Below are positions 2,060 to 42,582 of a DNA stretch of 64,000 nt, in pieces. Position numbers and translations under genes: made by a program. The notes under the pieces are model-generated. The model saw nothing but the letters and a program-made list of their open reading frames with translations, had not been told where the DNA came from and searched no databases. Where the stretch lies: sequence record LC727695.1; one strand, 5' to 3'. Positions within the stretch are counted from its first letter, which is position 1. Each line of letters opens with the position of its first letter.

Positions 2060-3715
2060 ATGAAGAAGGCATTAGTTCCTTTTAATATTTCTTTACTTAT
2101 TCCTACTAAAGAACAATTAAAGTTCTTAGGTCAAGTAAAGAGTCATGAGATATTTGAAGGTTTAGGTGGTAACTTTCATGAAGATGGTTTGTTCTCTGTT
2201 TCCATTTTTGGAAGAGTTGGATCAACTGATCGTGAGAGTTTATTTGGATATATCCATTTAGGTTTAGAACTTATCCATCCAGTTGTATATCGAAACTTAA
2301 TTAAATTAAAAGCTTTCTATGAAGAAATTATTCTTGGTAAGGCATTTGCAGTATTTGATGAATCTATTAAAGATTTTATCCGCGCTGATGAACTAACTGG
2401 TAAAACTGGTTATACATTCTTTTTTGATAACTGGAAACGAATTGACTTTGGGACCACTAAGTCAGGGATTCGGCTATCAAGGTTACAATTAATCGAAAAA
2501 TATAAAGATAACTGTATTTTTAAAGACATGATTGTAACACCTGCTGCTTATCGTGATGCAGAGATTGATGAGAATAATCGTGTTGAGATGGATGAGGTCA
2601 ATGAACATTATAGATATCTATTAAATCAGTCGTTTGGTGTACCTGACAGTTTTGGACCAAACGATGACTTGAGTATCTATGATCGCAAACGAGTAGCGAT
2701 GCAAAATACAGTATTAGCTATTTATGAACATTATGAAAGGTTATTAGCAGGTAGTAAACGAGGTTATATCCAATCTAAATGGGCATCCCGTCGTATTGCC
2801 AATGGTACCCGTAACGTCATTAGTTCGCTAGATACTAATGCGGCTGATCTTGATTCACCTAATCGACCAACATTCAAAGATGCTGTAGTTGGCTTACATC
2901 AAGCAGCTCGTTCTGTTGCACCACGTACAATCTTTGCACTAAGGCAAGGTGTAGTTGGTGAAGTGTTTGATACAGTTACTAACACTGTACAGCTCATCAA
3001 TAAGAAAACACTACGCTTAGAATGGGTTGATATCTCTAACGAAGATATGGATCTATGGGGAACTCCTGAAGGGCAAGAACAAATCATCAATGAGTTAGAT
3101 GTCATTGAAAAACGTTCACGTGCAATTGAAATTGCTGATCATTATCTAGCCCTTATTTACGTTGATGATAAACAGAATTTTAAAATATTCCGCAACATCG
3201 ATGAGTTACCTACTAATCTAAATAAGAAATTTGTTAGACCTATTACTTATGCCGAATTAGTTTACCTTAGTGGATTAAGTATGTGGCGAACAAACTCAGC
3301 GTTTGTTACACGATATCCTGTAGAAAACTACAATAGCTCTATCCCCTGTAAGATGTATGTTAAAACAACCGTAGTGGGTGAATTACGTTATCCGTTAAAT
3401 GATCAATGGGAACGTGGTGATACGTTGGAACCAGCCTTAGAATTCCCTGTGTTTGAATTAAATAAACCAGCCCAGTGGCATGACTCAGTATCCATCTCTC
3501 CTTCTATTCTCGCGCCATTGGGGGCGGATTTCGACGGGGACACTGTATCATTTAACGCAGTTTATTCAGAGGAAGCTATCGCTGAAACAGATGCTTTCTT
3601 TAAGAAACGTATTGCATATATACATGCCGATGGTCGACTGGCATTTAGTGTTGGTGTCCATACACTCAATTTAACTCTTCGGTACATGACTGGGGAACCC
3701 AAACAAAGGGATTAA
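2060..3715 (+). CDS. gp180: Virion RNA polymerase beta-prime subunit fragment carrying the catalytic motif
   Basis: 551 aa with LGADFDGDTVS (DxDGD Mg-binding motif), RxP-type TRYP motif and SRRIANGTRNVISS; AGGA RBS. Confidence 0.9.
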   Translation: MKKALVPFNISLLIPTKEQLKFLGQVKSHEIFEGLGGNFHEDGLFSVSIFGRVGSTDRESLFGYIHLGLELIHPVVYRNLIKLKAFYEEIILGKAFAVFDESIKDFIRADELTGKTGYTFFFDNWKRIDFGTTKSGIRLSRLQLIEKYKDNCIFKDMIVTPAAYRDAEIDENNRVEMDEVNEHYRYLLNQSFGVPDSFGPNDDLSIYDRKRVAMQNTVLAIYEHYERLLAGSKRGYIQSKWASRRIANGTRNVISSLDTNAADLDSPNRPTFKDAVVGLHQAARSVAPRTIFALRQGVVGEVFDTVTNTVQLINKKTLRLEWVDISNEDMDLWGTPEGQEQIINELDVIEKRSRAIEIADHYLALIYVDDKQNFKIFRNIDELPTNLNKKFVRPITYAELVYLSGLSMWRTNSAFVTRYPVENYNSSIPCKMYVKTTVVGELRYPLNDQWERGDTLEPALEFPVFELNKPAQWHDSVSISPSILAPLGADFDGDTVSFNAVYSEEAIAETDAFFKKRIAYIHADGRLAFSVGVHTLNLTLRYMTGEPKQRD

Positions 3716-3717
3716 TC

Positions 3718-6700
3718 ATGCGCTTAAATATTACACAGTTTCTGAAAAATTATAGTGTACGCGAATATGCTAAACTTCAGTCACCTAAGTTGCATGCTCT
3801 AAATAAACTTGATCTACCTTTCGAATCCATTTATCAGTTCTTCGATGGTAATAATGCAGTAATGGGTCCTAGTCAAACAGACCCATTATTCTCCAAACAT
3901 CAAGGTAAAGTATATATTGAGCATGTTACTGATATGCTTACATTTGAAGGTAATCCACGTAGGACTTCAAATATCCCAGCAACAATGATTCAAGAGTTTC
4001 GCCGCCAGAACCGTTTCTTTAAACCTTTACGCAGTGATACCGGTTTTAAATTATCAAACCAGAACATTCTGGTAATGAATTATAATTTAATTAACCCTCA
4101 ATGGAATTATATGGCTTCTTATAAAGCTACATGGTTCCGTTGGTCAAATGACATGCGTACATTCTGGAGTGGCGTAGCGGCTGCATGTGAACGTTTTCCT
4201 GGTTGGAACCAGTTCATTGATGTACACTTACCTGAGTTAGTTCCACCTCCTTCTTCTTTTAATAAACTACGAGGGGGTTTGACTCAAGATCTAGCTAATC
4301 AATTCAATACACCTGATATTCTAAATATATTTGATTTAGTTCGCTGGGTTTCTGATGATCGTGAAAGTTCTTTCATGAATGTCATCGATGCTAAGTATTA
4401 CGGTAACATTAATCTTTTATTCCGTGTACAAAGTTCATTCTTTGTTATTAACTTAGGGATGCTTGATCAATGGCGTCGTGATCCAGAAATTAAAGATGAT
4501 AAAGGTTATGATACCCAGCAAATAGCTAGGCGCCTTATTTCACTAGTATCAGCGATGGTTGAATATAACCAAGGTAATACTTCATTAATTAAAGAAGATA
4601 CGCCTATCTTTAATGAAGATATTATTGTTGATGAAGAAACTCCGGTTAGTTATGAAGAAGGTGAAGCAGAAGAGGTTGAGGATGTTGAGTCTAATAACGT
4701 TGAAGAAGAAGTAACTGAAGTTGATGTTATTGATGATGTTCAATTTGACCCAACCAACTTAACTAACTTAATTGATATTGGCGCAATTGAGGTAACATAT
4801 ACCCCACCACCAGAAAGTGATCTTGAGGTAACAAAGCTTATCATTGAAAAAGATCCACTGGAATCTTCACCTTCTCGCCAAATTAAAGAAGAGAAGGAAC
4901 TCATTGTAACAGATGTACCAGAAGATGAGTTATTCATCAATACTGAAGTTGATGAAGAAGATAAACTAATCGATGCCATTAGAGCTAAAGCATACGACAT
5001 GTATCGCGTGAATATGATTTCTGCGAATACATTCGAGCAAGCTCAAGAAGATTCGATTATGTATCGTCGTCTACCTGATCCATTTACCGATCCTAATGAT
5101 GAATCAGTAGAACCTATGACGATCGCTGAGGCGATGGAATATCATCCAGATGATCTTAAGATTCCAGAAGACACCACTTTTGAAGATAAGCCAACCATTG
5201 TTGATAAATCAATGTTGGGTAGTAAGTTAAAAGCCATCCAACGCAAATACAACAAGGTCTTATTAAAGAAAGATATTTTAAACAGTGTGTTATCTGTTCA
5301 GAAACAAGGCGTATCAGTAACTAATTACAAAATTGAAACTGTACGCGATTCTGGTAACCATTACCAAATCCACAAAGTTACATTAAAGCCTATTCGTGGT
5401 AGAAGTTCACAAGTAATGTTCCGTATCCCTGTCATTGATAATGACGGTAGGTTCATGTCTAATGGGGTAACATATCGCCAACGTTTACAACGTGCTGATA
5501 TTCCAATTCGTAAAGTTAATCCACGTAAAGTTGCATTGACCTCTTATTATAATAAGACCTTTGTGACCAGATCTGAACGTGCTGAAAACAACTTTGATAA
5601 TTGGTTAATCAGAGCGATTACCAACCGTGCATTAGATGGAAGTGATATGTCTGTACATTCAGTTACCTATGCTGAATTAGATCAATCCAACTATGTTCTA
5701 CCAAGGGTGTACACTACTTTAGGAACAGCTTTTAAAGGCTTCCATAATCACCGTAATGTGTTCTATTTTAATTTCAAAGATCGTAATGAATTCTTTGCAA
5801 AACAAGGATTACATATCGAAGATTATGAAACTGATGATTTGATAATGGTGGGGTTCAATGGCACTGATGCTATCTTGTTAGATAAGAATTCCATCTTTTA
5901 CATGAAAACAGGTAATGAGCTAGAACCTATTGGTACCATTACAGATATACTTGGCTTAGATCTAACCAAAGCGCCGTTAGAAGCTATTCTAATGTCAATT
6001 GGTGGTAAAGAGCTACCATTAGGTTTCATTTTAGCATATCACCATGGCTTAAACAATCTACTTAAGAAGTTGAATGTTAATTATCAGCGTCATCAGCGTG
6101 GCACCAGGATTGTTGTCAATAGTACGGATTATACATTAGCGTTCGCTGATGAGATCCTAGTATTTGATCGAGCTGATTATAAAGCAATGCTTGTATTAAG
6201 TGGACTCAAGCGTTATCATAAATCACTGCGGCGTTATTCTGTTTATGATTTCAATAAACGAGATGTTTACTTCAGGGTTCTTGAAGAAGCTGGATTAAGT
6301 AATAGATTTACACGTGATATTGATACACTCTTCTCAGCATGGGTCGATCCAATCACTGAGGGTCTACTCAAGGAGATGGGTGAACCAACTACTTTTGAAG
6401 GATTGCTTTATCGGTCTGTCGAGTTATTAACGAACGACTGGAGTCCAGCAGAAGTAGATGGTGCATATATGCGCTATCGTGGTTATGAGCGCATGGCAGG
6501 GGCTATTTTTAATGAACTCAATAGAGCGGTACGTGTATTTAATATGCGTAATGGTGGGTCAGTGCAAACTGTCGAGTTAGATCCACACGTGATCTGGCGC
6601 AAGATTGTACAAGATCCGACAGTAGCCACTATTGAAGATTCTAACCCCATTGCAAATATCCGTGAACAAGAAGCGATGACTTATCGTGGAGATGGTGGAC

Positions 6701-8073
6701 GCGGTCCAACTTCAATGGTTGCACGTACACGTATTTACGGTGAAGCGGATGTTGGTGTGGTTAGTGAATCAACTGTGGACTCAGGTGACGTTGGTGTTAT
6801 TGCTTACTTAGTACCTGATGCTAACTTTGTAAACATGCGTGGTGTTACGCGTATGTTTGATCCAAAGACAGATGGGCCAGCTAGACTACTCTCAACTAGT
6901 GCACTGCTTGGTGTTGCAACCGAACATGATGACCCTAAGCGAATTAACTTTATCTCAATTCAGCAGCAGCAAGGTATTTATGCTGATGGGTATACAGTTA
7001 CACCAGTTCGTACAGGCTATGAACAAATCATAGCCCAAAGGACTAGTTCTATCTTTGCTGTAGCAGCAGAACAAGATGGTGAGGTTGTAGCTATTGATGA
7101 ATATGGTATCCAAGTTAAATATGCCGATGGTAATGTATTTGGATATCAATTAGGTACAGTTCATGGCACAGCAGCTGGTGTTAACTATCCACACATTCTT
7201 GTTACCTCATTAAAGAAAGGTGATAAGTTTAAACGTGGAGATACTATCACATATAACAAACGTTATTTCTCTGAAGATAGGTATACGCCTGGGCAAGTAT
7301 TATGGAAAGCCGGTTGTATGGCTGTTGTAGCATTTGATGATAACCTTGACACTTTAGAAGACGGTTCAGTTATTTCTGAAGACCTAGCTAAAAGGTTAAA
7401 TACTCAAACAACTGCAATCAAGAATATCGATGTTAGGTTTGATCAGACTATTCGAGATATGGTGAAAGTTGGGGATCATGTCGACTTAAATTCAATTCTA
7501 TGTATAATTGAAGATCCTGAAACAGCTGCTCACTCACTATATGACGAGGCATCTATTGAGACATTACGCAAACTATCAGCATATTCGCCACGTGCTAAGC
7601 TCGTAGGTACAGTATCAAAGATTGAATGCTTCTATCATGGTGAAATAGACGATATGACACCAAGTTTACAAGCATTAGCTAATACGTCAGATAAACAACG
7701 CGCTGAACGAGCTAAATCATTGAAAGAACCTACTTTCACTGGACAAGTAGATGCTAACTATCGAGTGAAAGGACGAGCCTTAGAATATGACCACATGATT
7801 ATTCGAGTGTATATCGATCATGATATCCCATGTGGTGTTGGAGATAAAGGCGTAGTAGCTAACCAGATGAAAACGGTATTCTCCCGTGTAATGACTGGAC
7901 GTAATGAAACTGAAGATGGCCGTAATATTGATCTACTATTCGGTAATACATCGGTAGAAGAACGAATGGTTCTATCTCCTAAAATCATTGCTACAACAAC
8001 TGGTATCTTGTGGGCAGCTGGAAAACATCTTGTAGCTGTATATAGAGGAAACACTAATGCAAAAGCTAAGTAA
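3718..8073 (+). CDS. gp178: Virion RNA polymerase beta subunit, large N-terminal/middle part
   Basis: 1451 aa with beta motifs DTLEDGSVISE, VGDKGVVANQMK, DLLFG and HDDPKRINF; acidic insert at about residues 300-450. Confidence 0.9.
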   Translation: MRLNITQFLKNYSVREYAKLQSPKLHALNKLDLPFESIYQFFDGNNAVMGPSQTDPLFSKHQGKVYIEHVTDMLTFEGNPRRTSNIPATMIQEFRRQNRFFKPLRSDTGFKLSNQNILVMNYNLINPQWNYMASYKATWFRWSNDMRTFWSGVAAACERFPGWNQFIDVHLPELVPPPSSFNKLRGGLTQDLANQFNTPDILNIFDLVRWVSDDRESSFMNVIDAKYYGNINLLFRVQSSFFVINLGMLDQWRRDPEIKDDKGYDTQQIARRLISLVSAMVEYNQGNTSLIKEDTPIFNEDIIVDEETPVSYEEGEAEEVEDVESNNVEEEVTEVDVIDDVQFDPTNLTNLIDIGAIEVTYTPPPESDLEVTKLIIEKDPLESSPSRQIKEEKELIVTDVPEDELFINTEVDEEDKLIDAIRAKAYDMYRVNMISANTFEQAQEDSIMYRRLPDPFTDPNDESVEPMTIAEAMEYHPDDLKIPEDTTFEDKPTIVDKSMLGSKLKAIQRKYNKVLLKKDILNSVLSVQKQGVSVTNYKIETVRDSGNHYQIHKVTLKPIRGRSSQVMFRIPVIDNDGRFMSNGVTYRQRLQRADIPIRKVNPRKVALTSYYNKTFVTRSERAENNFDNWLIRAITNRALDGSDMSVHSVTYAELDQSNYVLPRVYTTLGTAFKGFHNHRNVFYFNFKDRNEFFAKQGLHIEDYETDDLIMVGFNGTDAILLDKNSIFYMKTGNELEPIGTITDILGLDLTKAPLEAILMSIGGKELPLGFILAYHHGLNNLLKKLNVNYQRHQRGTRIVVNSTDYTLAFADEILVFDRADYKAMLVLSGLKRYHKSLRRYSVYDFNKRDVYFRVLEEAGLSNRFTRDIDTLFSAWVDPITEGLLKEMGEPTTFEGLLYRSVELLTNDWSPAEVDGAYMRYRGYERMAGAIFNELNRAVRVFNMRNGGSVQTVELDPHVIWRKIVQDPTVATIEDSNPIANIREQEAMTYRGDGGRGPTSMVARTRIYGEADVGVVSESTVDSGDVGVIAYLVPDANFVNMRGVTRMFDPKTDGPARLLSTSALLGVATEHDDPKRINFISIQQQQGIYADGYTVTPVRTGYEQIIAQRTSSIFAVAAEQDGEVVAIDEYGIQVKYADGNVFGYQLGTVHGTAAGVNYPHILVTSLKKGDKFKRGDTITYNKRYFSEDRYTPGQVLWKAGCMAVVAFDDNLDTLEDGSVISEDLAKRLNTQTTAIKNIDVRFDQTIRDMVKVGDHVDLNSILCIIEDPETAAHSLYDEASIETLRKLSAYSPRAKLVGTVSKIECFYHGEIDDMTPSLQALANTSDKQRAERAKSLKEPTFTGQVDANYRVKGRALEYDHMIIRVYIDHDIPCGVGDKGVVANQMKTVFSRVMTGRNETEDGRNIDLLFGNTSVEERMVLSPKIIATTTGILWAAGKHLVAVYRGNTNAKAK

Positions 8074-11574: not shown

Positions 11575-12711
<1,137 letters not shown>

Positions 12712-12721
12712 TTAAAAACTA

Positions 12722-13648
12722 CTATTTTTTATAAGCAATAAATTTTCCAATATGCTTGAATCCCTTACAACTAATAGTAACTTTAATCGGATATTTAGCC
12801 TTCATTACATAAATTAACCTGGACATATTAAACGGCGCATAAAGTATAAAATCATTATCTACCATTTCTTTATGGAATGCATTAATCTTATCTTGGACTA
12901 GTTTAATATAATCCTCATCATTAATAATACTTTGTTTATCTGAAATAACAATCTTATCTACAGTATCGCCTTCAGCACATAGTCTTTCATATACCTCAGT
13001 ACGGATAAATGTATTAACTGCGATATATGTATTTTCTGTTACTTGTGTAGCTTGTGCACTATAAATATCACTAATACAGTAATTAGGTTTATATGGACCA
13101 AATGGATCAATAATATCTTTAATAGATACACTCTTTTTTGGTAGAACATGGGGTGTTTCTAAAAATGAAACACTGTCATGTGCATCAATATCTAAATACT
13201 TATTGACTAGTGGGGCAACGCGGTTGAATGCCTCTTCATAGATAGCCTACATGTAGCCACGGTAATCTGGTAAAGACGCATAATAATTACGCTGAACAAC
13301 AGTCTCGCAACTACTAACATAATTATAAAAAATATCTGCGTGCCTTAAAACATTATTAAATTCATCTACGCCTAGAATTGAACTAATCCAACTAACATCA
13401 TTATCGTGGATAAATATAGCTAAACGAAGGTTTTGCCGTTTTGGATTAGTTTCATCTTGGAATGGATATGTTGTATATAGCTCAGTGATAGCTTGTTTAA
13501 CTACATCAGGTGATTCATTGAAAAATTCTTTTGAGAATTGATCAATTGACATATTTTGTCTTTGCTGATATAGTTCATTAATACGTGCTTCTACTTGCAC
13601 AAGGAAGTTAATCTTTTTACTGATTTTAAGGCTATGTTCAGTATGCAT
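12722..13648 (-). pseudogene. Hypothetical gene of about 308 aa interrupted by one in-frame TAG at 13247-13249
   Basis: ...TAC ATG TAG GCT ATC TAT GAA...; the same frame continues for 174 sense codons to a TAG at 12722-12724. Confidence 0.7.
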
Positions 13649-13652
13649 TAAG

Positions 13653-14093
13653 TTATCTCTGTTTGATTGATTTAATAACATCACAAACAATTTCAAACCA
13701 TTCTTTTTCTTGAATGGTTAGGTTTGCTCCTGATAAAACTAATGGACCAAAACTTTTTGCTTTAAATAAAACGAATGGTCGACTATTAAGATTTAATAAT
13801 AGGGTATCACGAAGGATATTGGTAAGTCCATCTACGTATTGATACTTTAAACCATAGTCTAATTTATAATGGGAATTAACCTCTGGTTGAAGAAAAGCCT
13901 TTTCTTTTTTACCAGTGATGAGATACATCCGAAGACCTTTGAATGAAAAGAAATTCTCATTATCAAGTGTGGTCTTCTTCTCTTTTCCATTAAACTGAAA
14001 TAGATCAGGGAGCGTTGTATTACCGCTCTGATCTACAATGATGCTATCTACAGGATAATTATTTTGTACCCATGGGGTTTCTGGATTATTCAT
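13653..14093 (-). CDS. Hypothetical protein, 146 aa
   Basis: Start MNNPETPW at 14093 with GGAG RBS; overlaps the upstream stop. Confidence 0.7.
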   Translation of the reverse strand: MNNPETPWVQNNYPVDSIIVDQSGNTTLPDLFQFNGKEKKTTLDNENFFSFKGLRMYLITGKKEKAFLQPEVNSHYKLDYGLKYQYVDGLTNILRDTLLLNLNSRPFVLFKAKSFGPLVLSGANLTIQEKEWFEIVCDVIKSIKQR

Positions 14094-22044: not shown

Positions 22045-23232
22045 TTAAATACCTTCATTCTCATAATGAGTAATGCAGTGACTAACAAATGTTAACCAGA
22101 CTTTAAGAGTTACTGCTAACCAATGGGTGTAGTTACCAACAGGTTCTGCTAATTTTCGGGATATCTCAGCGAGCATATTAATTGCCTCGCCATTTGCCCT
22201 TCCCAATAACTCACTACGTTCAGCTAGCTGTCGAATTGAATCATCTACAACTACCTTAACTGTTTTATATTCTACTTCGCCTTGTTTAGCACGTTCAGCG
22301 ATCGTTAAAATATTAGCAATACCAGTTACAATATCACTTAGCGTAGTTACAGAAGGTACTTCTATATCTCGTTCAGTGCTATCAATTGCATTGATTTGTA
22401 ACTCTGTAAATTCCATTGTAAATGTATTGCGAACCATTTCTAGTGCAGATTGTTTATTAGTAACTGATGTAGCTATATGGTCAGCATCAGTATAAACAAA
22501 TGCACGATTAGCTGGTAAAATATAACTTCTATGGGTACCAGTAGAAGTAGTCTCACCTTTCTTTAATGGCTCATCCCCTGGCGGCGCTTTAAAATCACGA
22601 CGCACTATATCGGCAAAAGATTGTAATAACTCATCAATGATTTCTGTAGTGGTATCTTCGCCTTGATTATCTAAGATATTCAATGCTTGTCTACTAATAT
22701 TTCGAGCAATATTAGAAGTCATTTTAGGATAAGTCATTAAAATATAATTAGTGACTTCTTTGATATCTAAAAGATTATCTGGTCGATCACCAATGAATTC
22801 ACCGTTAATAGATAATCGCTGTAAACCAGAAACAGTCAATCGAGTATTAGTAGTACGATTACCTAGTTTTGCAAGTCGCCTAGATAACTTTTGCTGTGTT
22901 TTACGCACATGTGAAATGCTGCCAGTAAACTTGACGTAGAATGCCGTAAGTGTTTCGATTACCATCCGCACAATATCGCGTGCAGCCTTAGCAGCTCGAA
23001 CTAATGCATCTTTTAAAGCACGTAGTGTAATTATACCGCCTTCTTTTATGGAGAAGGCGGGATCGATACTTTCTAAAGCAAATGACATCGCTTTAGACAG
23101 GTCTTCAGATGCTACGTCACGTCCATCTAGCAGATCTTGATAACGAGCTAATCGATGGCGATATGCTTCAACAGAAACAATAGCCTCTTTGAGTTCATTA
23201 TTGGTAATTAATAGTTCTGCATATGTGGACAT
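22045..23232 (-). CDS. Internal head (inner body/ejection) protein, gp163-like
   Basis: 395 aa; ALE processing site; LPANRAF motif paralogous to the neighbouring gene. Confidence 0.7.
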   Translation of the reverse strand: MSTYAELLITNNELKEAIVSVEAYRHRLARYQDLLDGRDVASEDLSKAMSFALESIDPAFSIKEGGIITLRALKDALVRAAKAARDIVRMVIETLTAFYVKFTGSISHVRKTQQKLSRRLAKLGNRTTNTRLTVSGLQRLSINGEFIGDRPDNLLDIKEVTNYILMTYPKMTSNIARNISRQALNILDNQGEDTTTEIIDELLQSFADIVRRDFKAPPGDEPLKKGETTSTGTHRSYILPANRAFVYTDADHIATSVTNKQSALEMVRNTFTMEFTELQINAIDSTERDIEVPSVTTLSDIVTGIANILTIAERAKQGEVEYKTVKVVVDDSIRQLAERSELLGRANGEAINMLAEISRKLAEPVGNYTHWLAVTLKVWLTFVSHCITHYENEGI

Positions 23233-29747: not shown

Positions 29748-31196
29748 ATGTCAGACGGTATGGTTTTATACACTGACGGATCATTCCGACAGGGTAAAGC
29801 TGGTTGGGGTATTCATGGTTATACCTATGAAAATGTTGCAATGAAATCTAAAGCAGCCACCAAACAGCAACCAACAGCTAAGGGATACTTAGATGTAGGT
29901 GCAGATGAGACATGCACTGTTTTAAATTATATTGATGCATTTGGTAGTGTAACTAATAACCCTACTAATAATACAGGTGAGCTAACCGCTGCAATTGAGG
30001 CTTTCAAAATAGCTCATGAAGCAGATGCTCCTAGACTAACGATGCTCATGGATAGTGAATACGTTAGAAAAGGTATGACCGCATATTTACCCAAATGGAT
30101 TAAGTCTAATTGGATTAAATCAGACGGCACGCCGGTAGCAAACCAGGACCTATGGAAACAGATGGTCGAACTAAAAGCTAAATGGGAAGAAACTAATAAA
30201 CCATTAAGCATCCAATGGGTCCGTGGACATAACGGAGACATTGGTAATGAAAAAGCTGATGCTAACGCTAAGCTTGGTTCGGGACAGAATAATGATAAGC
30301 CAGTGATGGTTTCGGTTAAAGGCGAGGAAATTAACAAACTTAAAAAACAAGTTGTTAATCCACTTATCCTCGAAAGTAGGTTACTCTTCGCCATTAACTC
30401 TGGAGAAGAACCAGATGGGTTCTATTACACCTATAACTTAGGTCGTATGCATAACTATGGTCATAAACCAAAAGACACTGCTAAAGATAAATTAGCTAAA
30501 GCTGATTTAATTTTAGGGCGTCGTATCTCTGAAGCAACCTTCAGTGTATATAAGGCAAATGAACCAGATGAGTATCTCCAGTTACTAATTAATATGCATA
30601 CAGAAGCACTGGGTACTGAAAATCCAGAACTGGGTATCATCAATTTGGCAAACGCATATCGTGCAACCATTCGACAGAAAATTGAATCCATGGGGCTACC
30701 TGCTCTAGTCGTATGGAAAGATATCAATGTTTTGTCGACGCCAACAGATGAACTCATTAGTCGGACTCTTAATCCACCACGTATGGCAAATGATGCTGTA
30801 GCTACATTTAATGTTATGCGCAGTCGTCTTGAAGATTACTTGGCTGGTAAACTTGGAGAGTCGGTTGGTATTATTGATATTACCGAGCACTTCTTCGAGG
30901 AAGTCGCAAAGGGTAAGAAAGTTGGCTATCAACTACTTAAGACGATTACATCTAATACAGGCTTTGTAGAAGTTCCGATCACATTTAAAGATCGTAAGAT
31001 AAAATTAAAGCTTGTATTAAATATCGATATTCCAAGTAGAAACCAATTAGCTCGTATTGGAGCTAATAAAGTTAAAATGGAAATTCTTGTAGTAGCTGAA
31101 GGCCCATATTCTTATTCATATTCAATTGTGTTCGTGACGGATGATGGTTCAGCTATCTATCAATCACCCTATACACAATTTATTCTCCCAAAATAG
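29748..31196 (+). CDS. rnhA: Ribonuclease HI with a long C-terminal extension (gp155-like)
   Basis: YTDGS, NNTGEL, DSEYV, NQDLW and WVRGH..NEKAD motifs. Confidence 0.9.
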   Translation: MSDGMVLYTDGSFRQGKAGWGIHGYTYENVAMKSKAATKQQPTAKGYLDVGADETCTVLNYIDAFGSVTNNPTNNTGELTAAIEAFKIAHEADAPRLTMLMDSEYVRKGMTAYLPKWIKSNWIKSDGTPVANQDLWKQMVELKAKWEETNKPLSIQWVRGHNGDIGNEKADANAKLGSGQNNDKPVMVSVKGEEINKLKKQVVNPLILESRLLFAINSGEEPDGFYYTYNLGRMHNYGHKPKDTAKDKLAKADLILGRRISEATFSVYKANEPDEYLQLLINMHTEALGTENPELGIINLANAYRATIRQKIESMGLPALVVWKDINVLSTPTDELISRTLNPPRMANDAVATFNVMRSRLEDYLAGKLGESVGIIDITEHFFEEVAKGKKVGYQLLKTITSNTGFVEVPITFKDRKIKLKLVLNIDIPSRNQLARIGANKVKMEILVVAEGPYSYSYSIVFVTDDGSAIYQSPYTQFILPK

Positions 31197-36949: not shown

Positions 36950-39900
36950 TTAAATAACAGCACCTTTGGAAACTACCCAATTAGTACCGTCCCATAGGAG
37001 AGTAAGAATTGTTTTAGTATCGCCTAGGTCATCTACTATTAATGGAGTACCATTGTTCCACTGTAGCACTGCACTAGATAGTGTTGGCATAGCTACCTTA
37101 CCAAGTAGTACAAGAACAGCCGTTACCATACGATCAACAGGTCCATTCTCTAGTGTAATGGTTTGGTTAGCAGCAGTTTGAACCCTATAGCACTGTTGGT
37201 TAGCTGGTGTTAGAGTTAAAGCTGTACCAGTGAATGTACTTGATTTCAGACTATATACATCGAATGATTTATCTAGCTTCTTCCAAGTAATATTAGTACC
37301 AGTACGGCTACGTACCCAATCACCATCAGCGGTTACATCATTATTCGGACCTTGGAATAGAGTCCATGATTTAGCCGCAGCGTTACGTAGGAATAGTTGT
37401 CCACTAGTAGCATCAGCTTGATCAACTATAATAGTTACAGGTGTCCATTTAGAACCACTAGCTGTTTTCTCACGTACATAGTTAGTGCCATTAGCGCCTT
37501 CACTAGGTACTTCGCCAATAACTGCGGCTGGTACAGCTACCCATTCACCATTTTGCATACCCATTAGAGTATCATCGGTTTGCAGAGGTGCTACATCAAC
37601 CCAGTTACCAGCTACACGACCTTGAGGCTTAGTAGCTTGTGCAGTATCGCGTACTACATCTGAAGGAATTTCTGGGAATGTAATGGTAGCCCATTCAGTT
37701 TTACCACCTGCAATACCTTTACGAACGTATTGTGCATTGACAGTTGGATTAGGTACAGCATCAATAGCAGGTGTCGGTAGTTCAATAGCCGTCCATTCAA
37801 TAGCACCATCAGCTGTTGCTTTATGACGACCATAGAAAACACCAACCTCGGCATTTGGTACTTCATCAACAGGTAGTTCAGTCCAACCGAGTTTGTACCG
37901 AACCATTTTCTTATCGACATCTTCTGGATCAACTTCACTAACTGGAACTGACATTAGTTTGTAGAATACAACCCAGTTAGCATCTTTATACCAGACAGTG
38001 CCAGTTTTGTCGATACACCAGTCGCCACGGTTACCATCGATAGAGGTGGGTGCAGTTTGACCTTCAGGTAGAATTACCCAAGAGGATCCACGTTCACCTT
38101 TCTGACCGGTTTTACCAGGTATGCCTGGAACACCTTGTTTACCTTCAGGACCTTGTGGGCCTTCCGGACCCATAGCTAGGACACCTAGGCTTTCCCAAGT
38201 AAATGTACCTTCTGTATCAATACATACGAATACTTCTACTTGTCCTTCAGTGTTGGTGTGAATGGCAATACCTTTACCTACGTTATCAGCAGATGCAGCT
38301 GGTTTACCAGCATCATCACCAACGTAAATAATTAATAGCCCACCACCTTGTTTACCTTCAGGACCCTGAGGACCTTCAACGCCCTGAATACCTTGTTCAC
38401 CATTTAAGTCAATTGGGCCGATATAGCCATCAATCTCTTGACCTTGGTAAGTATAAAGCATCGGACCATTGTCGGTCTCAACCCAATACGAATCACCAGT
38501 AGTTAATTCAGGGTTAGTATCCTTCTTAGGTAATTGGGATACGTCGGTTAGAACACCTTTAATGTTTAAACCTTCACCCGGCTTACCTTGCGGACCTGCC
38601 ATGATACCAATACTAGTCCAGCTACTGCCGTCCATGTTAACAAATACTTCGCCCGTGGACTTAACAGCGTATGCTTTCCACTGATTCTCGGTAGTTGCTG
38701 TAGGAGGGGTATCTTCGGTTGTGTCAATTGCCGCGATGATCTGGATAGGTTCACCGACGGGACCCGGCTCGCCTTGTTTACCATCTGGCCCTTGCGGACC
38801 TTCGGGGCCTTCTTCACCTTTTGGTCCACGGTGTGTACCACTATTTACCCAATTACCATCTATCTTAACAAATAAGGTAGATGTGTCTTGTGTGAAGTAA
38901 GCTGCCTGATCAGGGGCATCTGCCGGTAGGGCTGCCTCATTGGCAACAGCACCAGTAATAACTACGTTCTTACCATGTAGACTGATTAACCATTCACCCT
39001 CAGTACCAGTGAACCCATTATCCAATGCTACTTGGAAAGCCGATTTACCTTGTGCCCCTGGCTCACCAGGTAGACCTTGATCACCGTCTTCACCTTTAGG
39101 ACCTTCAGGACCCTGAGGACCACGGAATGAACCCATGGCTGTCCATGAGATATCAACAGTCGGATCTTGGCCAGTCAGTACATAAACCGTATTGGTGGAA
39201 CGTACTGAAACACCTTGGTATTGTTCTACACCAGTGGTGGTTAATAGATCGTCAGCAGTTTCAACCGCTTTAACTACTTCTAAGTTACGACCTTGCGGAC
39301 CAGGTTCACCTTGCTTACCATCGGGACCCGGATCACCTGTGTTACCTGGTTTACCTTGTGGACCCTCAGGACCTTGGAAAGTACCTAGGTCTGACCATGC
39401 ACCTTTTACAAAGATGAATAGATGCCCTGGTTTACCAGCTTCCATAGTAACTAAGTATGCTTCTGATTCTTTAGCTACAGATGGATCAGGTAAATCAGCT
39501 GGAGATGGTAGTGAATCCTTAATGGTGAATGGCATTGCTGGTTCGCCCTGAGGACCTTCAGGACCAATATCACCATCTTCACCTTTAGGACCTTCGGGGC
39601 CCTCAGGTCCACGTTCACCCTGTGGTGTAACTGGGAACCAATCATAGTCATCAATAGTTGGATTCTCTGGCGGATTATTACCTGAGATAAGCATCCACGC
39701 CCAGAGTTGATTATTCCATGAATAAGCATCACCAGGTTTATTACTTTCAGTCTTAGGTAATTCTAAGTTATTAGGCCAACGACCACGGATAACTAGACCA
39801 GTACCATCTGGACCACGAAGTGAACCTGTTTCAACCCAACGACCTTTTACAGGGGGATCTTCATTACCTAGCGGTGATTCCCATACCCATAGCCGATCTT

Positions 39901-40213
39901 CAACGAACCAAGCATCACCGACATTATGCGTATCTAATGGTTTAATATCTTGTTCGAATGTTGCTAGATCAACATTAGCGATAATATTGATAGCTGGACC
40001 AACCGGACCAGGAGGACCTTGTTCGCCATCTTTACCTGGCGCACCATCTTCACCCTTTAATCCAGGTATAGTGACAGGATCAACGAAAGTGGTATTAAGA
40101 CCCACCCCGGTAGAAACCGGGATGTGTCCATTAACTACAGAAGTGGGTTCATCAATTGATGATACCCGTTTGGGGAGTTCCCCGTTTACATAATCTTCAA
40201 ATGCAGAAGCCAT
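36950..40213 (-). CDS. gp146: Collagen-like tail fibre protein, 1087 aa
   Basis: Many Gly-X-Y runs separated by globular modules; foldon-like repeats; C-terminal beta-sandwich ending LLWDGTNW. Confidence 0.8.
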
Positions 40214-42582
40214 TATACTACTTCCTCAAGTTCGATTTTCATCAGTCCAGTGGTATTGGATACAGCGTTTGCTGAGTCACAGTTATACCACTTATTGCCA
40301 TCCTTGATGGTGTAGGTGTCAACTTGATTTGCATCATCCGCCTTATAAGTGAAGTTTAAGCTACCAGTAGAACCTTTAGATAGGTTACTGCAACGTAGTT
40401 TACCAGTATTGGTTACTTCAGTACCAATATCAGTTTCACGGTTCGGCCAAGCAGCCACACTTAGAGTGCGGAATACAAATCCACCTAGTACATAAGTACC
40501 ACCATTTACACTATTAGCTTCAACACCAGCTAAACCTTTTAGAACCACACTGTTAAAATCGTAGGTTCCTTTAGGATCATCGTCATGTACTAGTAATGCA
40601 CGTGTCCATACCTTACCAGTGGCATCAGATTTCCAATCCTCAGTAGCCCACTTACCGCCAGGCGCATTCATGGCCGGAGCTGCACTTAGTTTCTGAGTAG
40701 AGGTTAAAGTAATGACATGACTTTGTACTTGGGTTCCAAAGTTACCACCTGAGCGAAGGCGAGCTGCTGGATAGGTAACCGTTGCAGTAGGAGCCGCATT
40801 TGCAATAGCTACAACAGTAGTAGCAGTAGCTATACTACCGTTAGCTGCACGTTTAGCAGTAATTAATAGGTTATTAGTGCTGTCGTTATAAGTACCTGAC
40901 TTATAAGTAACTACCTTAGCAATTTCTGCTTCATTTGCACTGGTTATAGTGAGCTGATCATTTGGTGAGGAATAAACCACACTATCAGCATTAGATACTG
41001 TATTGGCAACAGTAGCAGTTTCACCTACTTTAATAGCACTTTGACCAGACGGATAAGTTACTTGACCAATATTAACAACTGGGCGAAGATCGTTTAACTG
41101 CATGGTGTTAATTTTATCTTCGGAACCAGCATCACTGGAAGTAAACCATTCTGACCATGAACCAGTGGATTTCTGAACACGTACACGGAAACCATATGCC
41201 TTAGTAGTATTACCACGGTCAGCTACGTAAAGACCAGTAACCTCTAGTTCTTTAGTAGGTGCAACAGTACCACTACTTTCTTTCAGTGCACCAAAGTCAG
41301 CAATTTCGTATGCTACTATATTTTCATCAGTAACTACTTTAATTGCAACAAGGTCATCTTCTTTAAGTTCTGTTTGACCTAACGGATAACCGCCAGTAAA
41401 TACAGCACTAGTAATATTAGCGGGAGTATCGGCTAATACCTTAGTAGTGAATTTAGCCCCATCGGCGTGTTCTACAACAATATCAGCATAACCTTCAGTA
41501 GTGGGTGCACCAAGATCAATATCGGCAGTAGCAATCCACATAGGTGGATTAACGCCAGGAGTTACAACTGCATCTATGTTATTGATTTTAACACTAGGTA
41601 CATAACTAGAATGTCCAGTTATTGCATCAACGATAACTCGAACATTACTAGTAGTTGATAGGCATGACTGTACGCTGTGCCCATCGGGGGTACGCACAAT
41701 ACTACCTACGTTCTGACTGGGGTCAGTTGCTTGTACATCTTTGACGAATACACCGCCACTAATACCTTCATTTTTAGGAAGGTTCTTAAGATCAACGGTC
41801 GTTTCATCAACGCCTTCAACAATACGGATATTACCGTCATTCTTGAATGCAATGTAATCAGTTAAACTACCAATCTGGAATTCACCATTGTCATAAATAC
41901 GAATTTCAGACTCAGGTAATTCGGGTAATGCACCTTGCGTAGTGGGCGCAGAAGCGTTCTTTAGATAAGAATAACCTTCTGCTTCCATACGACCTTGTTC
42001 CATCATACGCTGAGGTATTTTATCACCAGCAGTTAAGTCGTCTTGATTTAGACGCTTATCAAACAGGAAAGCAAAGTTATGGAAAGCAGCGTTGGATGAT
42101 AATCCACCATTCTTGCCAGTTACACGCAGTACATCTTTAACTGTGTAACCTTGTTGATTTAAGAGCGACTGGAGTAGTTCAGCAGTCATGGTTGCATGCA
42201 GTGATGTTAACCATTCCTGTTCAGTACCTTGGAAACCGTTTTCCACAGCTACTTCATATGCACTCTTACCAGCATCACCTTTAAGGGATGCTATAAACTC
42301 TTCTTCAGTACCAACGAAACCTAGATCGACTGCGATTTGATAAGAAGATTTACCTTTAAGCGAATCAAGCCATTCGGTTTCAGTTCCCTGGAAACCATTT
42401 TTAACGGCAATCTCGTACGCACTAAGACCGGGTGCTCCAGTCTGTAGTTTTGACAGCAGAAACTTATAGTTATCGACTTGACCAGCTGCATCGGTATGAA
42501 TTAATTCAATATACTCGCTATCGTTAAGAATAGCTAGATCCGGCAGTTGACTGATCTTGCCTTTGTCTGTAACATTTGCCAT
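40213..42582 (-). CDS. Tail fibre/structural protein (gp145-like), 789 aa
   Basis: Three SAYE/Q-x-AV-x-x-GF-x-GTE-x-EW/F repeats; Ig-like beta-rich C-terminal half; TAATG coupling to the collagen fibre gene. Confidence 0.7.
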   Translation of the reverse strand: MANVTDKGKISQLPDLAILNDSEYIELIHTDAAGQVDNYKFLLSKLQTGAPGLSAYEIAVKNGFQGTETEWLDSLKGKSSYQIAVDLGFVGTEEEFIASLKGDAGKSAYEVAVENGFQGTEQEWLTSLHATMTAELLQSLLNQQGYTVKDVLRVTGKNGGLSSNAAFHNFAFLFDKRLNQDDLTAGDKIPQRMMEQGRMEAEGYSYLKNASAPTTQGALPELPESEIRIYDNGEFQIGSLTDYIAFKNDGNIRIVEGVDETTVDLKNLPKNEGISGGVFVKDVQATDPSQNVGSIVRTPDGHSVQSCLSTTSNVRVIVDAITGHSSYVPSVKINNIDAVVTPGVNPPMWIATADIDLGAPTTEGYADIVVEHADGAKFTTKVLADTPANITSAVFTGGYPLGQTELKEDDLVAIKVVTDENIVAYEIADFGALKESSGTVAPTKELEVTGLYVADRGNTTKAYGFRVRVQKSTGSWSEWFTSSDAGSEDKINTMQLNDLRPVVNIGQVTYPSGQSAIKVGETATVANTVSNADSVVYSSPNDQLTITSANEAEIAKVVTYKSGTYNDSTNNLLITAKRAANGSIATATTVVAIANAAPTATVTYPAARLRSGGNFGTQVQSHVITLTSTQKLSAAPAMNAPGGKWATEDWKSDATGKVWTRALLVHDDDPKGTYDFNSVVLKGLAGVEANSVNGGTYVLGGFVFRTLSVAAWPNRETDIGTEVTNTGKLRCSNLSKGSTGSLNFTYKADDANQVDTYTIKDGNKWYNCDSANAVSNTTGLMKIELEEVV

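What the first reader, a model, noticed from the sequence alone, without database searches (positions are those of the whole stretch)
12722..13648. Gene split by a single in-frame amber codon
Seen: 133 codons from the likely start at 13648, then TAG at 13247-13249, then 174 more sense codons in the same frame with normal codon usage. The downstream part has no in-frame ATG, GTG or TTG until its codon 128, so the ORF track misses 525 nt that look coding. Options are a recent nonsense mutation, a sequencing error, or programmed readthrough giving short and long forms. TAG ends other genes here (e.g. 31194-31196), so genome-wide recoding is unlikely.
Basis: seen in the sequence. Interest (0 to 1): 0.65.

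Follow-up and report, generated by a model that had tools for sequence, protein, structure and literature searches.

The report
Nonsense mutation in dispensable phage gene
One isolate of the phiKZ group of giant Pseudomonas phages (PhiBrmt) carries a real single-base change that turns a tyrosine codon into a stop codon in gene gp173, an orphan gene that a transposon screen shows phiKZ does not need, so this is an ordinary recent knock-out and not recoding or programmed readthrough.

Summary
On the minus strand, 133 codons run from ATG 13648, TAG sits at 13247-13249, and 174 further sense codons follow in the same frame down to the stop at 12722-12724. The window is Pseudomonas phage PhiBrmt (LC727695.1, genus Phikzvirus) and the gene is the orthologue of phiKZ gp173 (PHIKZ173). 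It differs from phiKZ at exactly 1 of 927 bases: TAT (Tyr134) became TAG. The change is not an assembly error. Contigs built separately from two runs of the source sample (about 372x and about 2290x, matching the published Illumina and PacBio HiFi coverages) both carry it. It is private to this isolate: 45 other phage records have a different base there, and three full-length protein lineages keep Tyr. The phage's 7 tRNAs include no amber suppressor, and TAG ends 5 other long ORFs in the window. A published phiKZ transposon screen found 34 insertions in PHIKZ173 and none in its neighbours gp174 and gp175, so the gene is dispensable and breaking it is not polar. PhiBrmt makes normal virions and forms plaques on 11 of 39 strains. 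The protein has no known function and no relatives outside phiKZ-like phages. Verdict: an ordinary, recent nonsense mutation, of low interest. The scan had not reported it before.

The parts
12722..13648 (-). Orthologue of phiKZ gp173 (PHIKZ173, phrog_26994, function unknown), 308 codons plus stop, interrupted at codon 134. An alternative upstream start at 13681 gives 319 codons.
   Evidence: It is 926/927 identical to phiKZ. LC727695.1 annotates it as two 'hypothetical protein' fragments.
13247..13249 (-). Premature amber codon TAG replacing TAT (Tyr134). The changed base is + strand position 13247 (C here, A in relatives).
   Evidence: Alignment with phiKZ, 124.01 and 30-1. Contigs of two runs of the source sample have C, and phiKZ RNA runs have A. 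The 61-mer census finds 1 exact match in 46 records.
13250..13648 (-). The part still translated: an N-terminal fragment of 133 aa (144 aa if translation starts at 13681).
   Evidence: It matches phrog_26994 positions 12-144.
12722..13246 (-). The stranded C-terminal part: 174 codons plus the original stop. It is still identical to phiKZ, and its first in-frame start is at codon 128 (ATG 12865, a 47-aa remnant).
   Evidence: dN/dS of this part against OMKO1 is 0.20, so relatives maintain it as coding sequence.
12655..12721 (-). Strong hairpin followed by a U-run between gp173 and gp174, terminator-like. Termination itself is inferred.
   Evidence: MFE -34.6 kcal/mol, z -4.9, 0 of 200 shuffles fold as well. 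A phiKZ RNA-library contig covers only 12703-13673.
11575..12639 (-). Downstream neighbour gp174 (structural protein), which tolerated no transposon insertions in phiKZ. It is intact here.
   Evidence: Annotation. PHIKZ174 has 0 insertions in 1065 bp.
13653..14093 (-). Upstream neighbour gp172 (unknown function, phrog_14353), intact here.
   Evidence: PHIKZ172 has 10 insertions in 441 bp.

Best explanation
This is a real, very recent mutation private to one isolate. A single T-to-G change on the coding strand (A to C at + strand 13247) converted Tyr134 (TAT) of the PhiBrmt orthologue of phiKZ gp173 into an amber stop. Ribosomes are expected to terminate there and release a 133-aa N-terminal fragment. 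The remaining 174 codons are left untranslated, apart from the low basal misreading that any stop codon allows. The phage tolerates this because gp173 is a dispensable accessory gene restricted to the genus. The essential neighbour gp174 does not depend on gp173 being intact, since it lies behind a terminator-like hairpin and phiKZ survives transposon insertions in gp173. Shown: the base change, its presence in the reads, its uniqueness, the lack of a phage suppressor tRNA, the dispensability of the phiKZ orthologue, and the viability of PhiBrmt. Inferred: that the truncated product is non-functional, and that the mutation is neutral rather than selected.
For: Window and LC727695.1 have TAG where phiKZ, 124.01 and 30-1 have TAT, and this is the only difference in 927 nt from phiKZ. 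Two runs of the source sample, at about 372x and about 2290x contig depth, both show C at 13247 with no alternative contig, while phiKZ RNA runs show A. The published assembly used 420x MiSeq and 2344x HiFi reads after three rounds of plaque purification. Only 1 of 46 phage records matches the 61-mer around the stop exactly. All other records annotate one CDS there. Only the two source-sample runs hold 99-100% of the sampled words, and the 18 other holder runs from 7 other studies hold 0.95. Tyr134 is kept in three full-length lineages: phiKZ type, P0002 and OMKO1. dN/dS against OMKO1 is 0.24 for the N part and 0.20 for the C part, so the whole gene is maintained as coding sequence in the genus. 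The 7 tRNAs of the whole genome are Leu-UAA, Pro-UGG, Met-CAU, Asp-GUC, Asn-GUU twice and Thr-UGU, with no CUA anticodon. TAG terminates 5 other long ORFs in the window. gp173 is the only phiKZ open frame split in these 64 kb. Background divergence from phiKZ is 31 of 27,346 bases in window 3530-30875, which predicts about one SNP per 927 nt. phiKZ TnSeq Table S2 (bioRxiv 10.1101/2025.11.23.690004) lists PHIKZ173 with 34 unique insertions in 960 bp (index 0.044, 26,107 reads) and PHIKZ170, 171, 174, 175 and 176 with 0. PhiBrmt forms normal myovirus particles and plaques on 11 of 39 strains. No relatives exist outside Phikzvirus: tblastn of 50,697 phage genomes, the word search of 5.8 billion proteins, and HMMER over 1.84 billion representatives.
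Against: The reads were seen only as contigs, which drop rare variants, so a minority TAT sub-population in the stock cannot be excluded. The two runs come from the same sample as the assembly, so they rule out a platform or assembly error but not a mutation that arose during laboratory amplification. Dispensability was measured for phiKZ on PAO1 in LB at 37 C, not for PhiBrmt on its own hosts. The host genome (Pa12 and its brown mutant) was not available to check for an amber suppressor. Nothing tested here separates a neutral loss from a selected one.
Confidence: 0.9

Rival explanations
1. The mutation is real but selected, not neutral. On this reading, loss of full-length gp173 helped PhiBrmt on the host it was isolated on (the LPS-defective Pa12 brown mutant), for example because gp173 triggers a host defence or is costly there.
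For: Phages often escape abortive-infection systems through nonsense mutations in a dispensable trigger gene (general knowledge, not tested here). The phage was isolated on an unusual host. Most scattered singleton changes that separate PhiBrmt from both phiKZ and PaSz-1 in the first 30 kb alter the protein, 6 of 7, which fits either recent unpurged mutations or adaptation.
Against: No defence-related or anti-defence family matches gp173. PhiBrmt plates about equally on Pa12 and its brown mutant. One SNP in 927 nt is what background divergence predicts. No second independent loss of gp173 occurs among the 46 other records.
Confidence: 0.07
2. The TAG is read through, by a programme or by a suppressor tRNA, so that both a 133-aa and a 308-aa form are made.
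For: The downstream frame is fully open with normal codon usage. A low level of near-cognate misreading of UAG occurs in all bacteria (general knowledge).
Against: The stop is private to one isolate, and relatives have a Tyr codon. The downstream frame is open simply because there has been no time for decay, with 0 further differences from phiKZ. There is no CUA-anticodon tRNA among the phage's 7 tRNAs. TAG is a normal terminator for 5 other long ORFs in the window.
Confidence: 0.02
3. Sequencing or assembly error: the true sequence is TAT.
For: It is a single-base difference from 45 near-identical genomes.
Against: Contigs assembled independently from two runs of the source sample, at about 372x and about 2290x, both have the TAG base and no alternative contig at that place. 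The depths match the published Illumina and HiFi coverages. The site is not in a homopolymer.
Confidence: 0.01

Closest known systems
phiKZ gp173 (PHIKZ173, AAL83074.2), a hypothetical protein shown to be non-essential by TnSeq
   Same: Same gene and same neighbours (gp172 upstream, gp174 downstream), 926 of 927 bases identical, and the same PHROG family, phrog_26994.
   Different: phiKZ and 45 other records have TAT (Tyr) at codon 134 and encode one protein of 308-319 aa. PhiBrmt has TAG and can make only the first 133 aa.
Classical amber mutants of phages (for example T4 or lambda am mutants)
   Same: A sense codon mutated to UAG inside a phage gene truncates the product.
   Different: Classical amber mutants lie in essential genes and grow only on suppressor hosts. 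Here the gene is dispensable, so no suppressor is needed, and the allele arose naturally or during routine propagation.
Programmed stop-codon readthrough and TAG reassignment in phages
   Same: An in-frame TAG with an open, coding-looking frame behind it.
   Different: Those systems keep the stop codon across relatives, and recoded phages usually carry a suppressor tRNA and avoid that codon as a terminator. None of these holds here.

Membership tests
phiKZ gp173 family (phrog_26994) | Sequence match over the full profile length | tested here: met
   The two halves cover profile positions 12-144 and 146-319 of 319, with E 1.6e-92 and 3.9e-121.
phiKZ gp173 family (phrog_26994) | Conserved position between gp172 and gp174 | tested here: met
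   Same gene order in LC727695.1, phiKZ, 124.01, 30-1 and OMKO1.
phiKZ gp173 family (phrog_26994) | One uninterrupted reading frame of about 308-319 codons | tested here: not met
   TAG at codon 134. It is a disrupted member of the family, in effect a pseudogene.
Programmed stop-codon readthrough | The stop codon is conserved in relatives | tested here: not met
   1 of 46 phage records carries it. Three protein lineages have Tyr.
Programmed stop-codon readthrough | Both a short and an extended protein product are made | not testable with these tools
   No proteomic or ribosome-profiling data for PhiBrmt were found.
TAG reassignment or suppressor-dependent recoding | A suppressor tRNA with a CUA anticodon is present | tested here: not met
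   7 tRNAs in the whole genome, none with CUA. The host genome was not available.
TAG reassignment or suppressor-dependent recoding | TAG is not used as a terminator, and in-frame TAGs recur in many genes | tested here: not met
   TAG ends 5 other long ORFs. gp173 is the only phiKZ frame split in 64 kb.
Assembly or sequencing artefact | The base is not reproduced across independent read sets | tested here: not met
   Two runs of the source sample (about 372x and about 2290x) agree on the TAG base. Only contigs were available, not raw reads.

The most novel reading that the evidence does not exclude
The loss of gp173 was selected. On this reading gp173 is sensed by, or costly in the presence of, some host factor of the Pa12 lineage, so the amber allele would be a natural escape mutation pointing to a function for an orphan phiKZ gene.
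Probability: 0.06. Interest if true: 0.45.

Novelty: new member of a known kind. Interest (0 to 1): 0.1.

Why it matters
It matters only modestly. It corrects the annotation: the two 'hypothetical protein' CDSs RVBP14_2070 and RVBP14_2080 of LC727695.1 are fragments of one disrupted gene. It also provides a natural knock-out allele that independently agrees with the transposon-screen call that phiKZ gp173 is non-essential, in a different phage isolate that plaques on 11 different clinical strains. Finally, it shows that this phage group does not recode TAG. Because PhiBrmt is studied for phage-therapy cocktails, it is useful to know it is a gp173-null variant, but nothing suggests that this affects its use.

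Tried and rejected
Attempts to assign a function to gp173 all failed.
- Pfam gave only sub-threshold noise: NA37 at 16.9 bits and GHD at 16.2 bits.
- NCBIfam gave noise: adenylate kinase, E 0.019.
- PADLOC gave nothing.
- PDB sequences gave noise, E 0.2 or worse.
- The ESM Atlas gave no usable hit.
- IMG/VR held no relatives.
- A single-sequence AlphaFold2 model had mean pLDDT 34.7 and was unusable, so I ran no fold search.
- The exhaustive HMMER search returned only two short fragments of the same gene, with error-like ends.

Literature leads that went nowhere:
- 'gp173' in the Rhc preprint is a Goslar protein. In the Erwinia and Burkholderia papers it is those phages' own numbering, so all are unrelated.
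- The ASO knock-down paper does not mention gp173.
- The two PhiBrmt papers do not mention the stop codon.
- The supplements of the phiKZ transcript-boundary paper are not held.

The window's own assembly is not held for the genome search, so I used the GenBank record instead.

Re-initiation downstream of the TAG was considered and rejected. The first in-frame ATG, GTG or TTG is 128 codons on, and only ATT, ATC or ATA codons lie between.

Full report
**Observation.** On the minus strand, an ATG at 13648 opens a frame of 133 sense codons. TAG follows at 13247-13249, then 174 more sense codons run to the stop at 12722-12724. The mechanical ORF list shows only 13247..13696 and a 47-aa remnant at 12722..12865. 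The first in-frame ATG, GTG or TTG after the TAG is 128 codons downstream. Both halves hit one PHROG family, phrog_26994 (unknown function). The upstream part covers profile positions 12-144 and the downstream part 146-319, so the TAG sits exactly at profile position 145.

**Identity.** The region is 100% identical to Pseudomonas phage sp. Brmt (LC727695.1, genus Phikzvirus), with window coordinate equal to record coordinate minus 124000. It is 99.8-99.9% identical to 45 other phiKZ-like records. In phiKZ the gene is PHIKZ173 (gp173), between gp172 and the structural gene gp174. The Brmt record annotates two separate 'hypothetical proteins' of 133 and 47 aa. Every other record annotates one CDS.

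**What the stop is.** An alignment shows TAG in the window and in Brmt, and TAT (Tyr) in phiKZ, 124.01 and 30-1. Over the 927 nt this is the only difference from phiKZ. A 61-mer centred on the codon matches exactly in 1 of 46 records, and the other 45 each have one mismatch. Tyr134 is also kept in a 93%-identical protein (P0002) and in OMKO1. Against OMKO1, dN/dS is 0.24 for the N-terminal part and 0.20 for the C-terminal part. The whole gene is therefore maintained as one coding sequence in the genus.

**Error or real.**
- Two public runs from the same sample as the window hold 99-100% of the region's sampled words. The 18 other holder runs, from 7 other studies, hold 0.95, which is what loss of the words spanning one SNP would give (that reading is an inference).
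- Laid on the window, the contigs of the two source-sample runs (depth about 372 and about 2290) both have C at + strand 13247, with no alternative contig. Two phiKZ RNA runs have A.
- The depths match the published 420x MiSeq and 2344x PacBio HiFi coverage of PhiBrmt, which was plaque-purified three times before sequencing (PMC12243511).
- An assembly or platform error is therefore very unlikely. Only contigs were available, so a minority TAT sub-population cannot be excluded.

**Recoding or readthrough.**
- The whole Brmt genome has 7 tRNAs (Leu-UAA, Pro-UGG, Met-CAU, Asp-GUC, Asn-GUU twice, Thr-UGU) and none reads UAG.
- Among 58 long ORFs in the window, stop usage is TAA 41, TGA 11 and TAG 6, and one of those TAGs is this one.
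- gp173 is the only phiKZ open frame that is split in the 64 kb.
- A stop that is private to one isolate cannot be a conserved readthrough signal.
- The downstream frame looks intact simply because no time has passed for decay.

**Why the phage tolerates it.**
- The phiKZ genome-wide transposon screen (Chan et al., bioRxiv 10.1101/2025.11.23.690004, Table S2) lists PHIKZ173 with 34 unique insertions in 960 bp, an insertion index of 0.044 and 26,107 reads. That is among the densest in that part of the genome. PHIKZ170, 171, 174, 175 and 176 have none.
- gp173 is therefore dispensable on PAO1, and disrupting it is not polar on the gp174 gene, which tolerated no insertions.
- A strong hairpin (-34.6 kcal/mol, z -4.9) with a U-run directly follows the gp173 stop. 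A phiKZ RNA-library contig covers just 12703-13673. Both fit a separate transcription unit, although contigs cannot prove transcript ends.
- In nucleus-forming phages transcription is separated from translation (abstract of PMC12908238). Rho-type polarity from a nonsense codon is therefore not expected. This is an inference.
- PhiBrmt makes normal myovirus particles and plaques on 11 of 39 clinical strains (PMC12915314).

**How recent.** In window 3530-30875 the phage differs from phiKZ at 31 of 27,346 positions, which predicts about one SNP per 927 nt. Positions where Brmt differs from both phiKZ and PaSz-1 mostly cluster in mosaic tracts: tail-fibre genes at about 37.7-40.8 kb, 30.0-30.4 kb and 22.85-22.98 kb. 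In the first 30 kb the rest are scattered singletons, and 6 of 7 change the protein. That pattern suits very recent mutations that selection has not yet filtered. It was judged against only two relatives, except for the TAG itself.

**What gp173 is.** Its function is unknown.
- tblastn over 50,697 phage genomes finds it only in the 47 Phikzvirus records.
- The word search over 5.8 billion proteins finds one cluster.
- HMMER over 1.84 billion representatives finds two short fragments of the same gene.
- Pfam, NCBIfam, PADLOC, PDB sequences, IMG/VR and the ESM Atlas give nothing usable.
- A single-sequence fold was unusable, with pLDDT 34.7.
- The phiKZ record does not flag it as a virion protein, unlike gp174 to gp178.

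It is a genus-restricted accessory orphan.

**Verdict.** This is a real, recent, isolate-private Tyr134-to-amber mutation that truncates a dispensable orphan gene (confidence about 0.9). The only mildly interesting alternative is that the loss was selected on the unusual isolation host (about 0.06-0.07), and nothing here supports that. Readthrough and sequencing error are each at about 0.01-0.02. The finding is ordinary. Its practical use is to correct the annotation and to provide a natural gp173-null allele that agrees with the transposon screen.

Noticed in passing
window 3530 (between ORFs 2060..3715 and 3718..8073): phiKZ carries about 1.44 kb more than PhiBrmt here, holding PHIKZ179. The TnSeq paper calls gp179 an intron-encoded homing endonuclease. 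In PhiBrmt the flanking RNA-polymerase ORF is 551 aa, against 491 aa for phiKZ gp180. The scan has already treated this as finding s1-160898.
   Followed up: partly
window 37739-40840 (gp146/gp145 tail-fibre genes); also 30014-30437 and 22852-22978: Differences between PhiBrmt and both phiKZ and PaSz-1 cluster densely here and are mostly synonymous, which looks like recombination (mosaic) tracts. gp146 also has a 6-residue length difference (1091 against 1097 open codons). This might bear on the dual pili/flagella receptor use reported for PhiBrmt.
   Followed up: no
window 12655-12721, minus strand: A very stable hairpin (-34.6 kcal/mol, z -4.9) plus a U-run lies directly after the gp173 stop and before gp174. 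The simple terminator scan missed it because the stem is long and carries internal loops.
   Followed up: partly
window 13546-13574, plus strand: A near-perfect sigma-70-type promoter match (TTGACA, 17-nt spacer, TATAGT, with an extended TG, 11 of 12) lies antisense inside gp173. The region as a whole has fewer such matches than shuffles do, 3 against a mean of 8.4.
   Followed up: no
window 3417, 9793, 14015, 18548, 20461: Scattered singleton amino-acid changes separate PhiBrmt from both phiKZ and PaSz-1: D to G in gp180, D to N in gp177, P to T in gp172, and A to T and E to G in gp165. Whether they are private to PhiBrmt was not checked against other relatives.
   Followed up: no
LC727695.1 45915-45998 (outside the window; L011:1501-1587): The seventh tRNA-like gene is an unusually long (87 nt) second tRNA-Asn (GUU) with the weakest Rfam score of the seven, 53.7 bits.
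   Followed up: no
window 13648 and 13681, minus strand: The gp173 start is ambiguous. Most records use ATG 13648 (308 aa). The phiKZ record uses an upstream in-frame ATG at 13681 (319 aa) that overlaps the end of gp172. The PHROG profile and a metagenomic fragment (P0004) include the longer N-terminus.
   Followed up: partly
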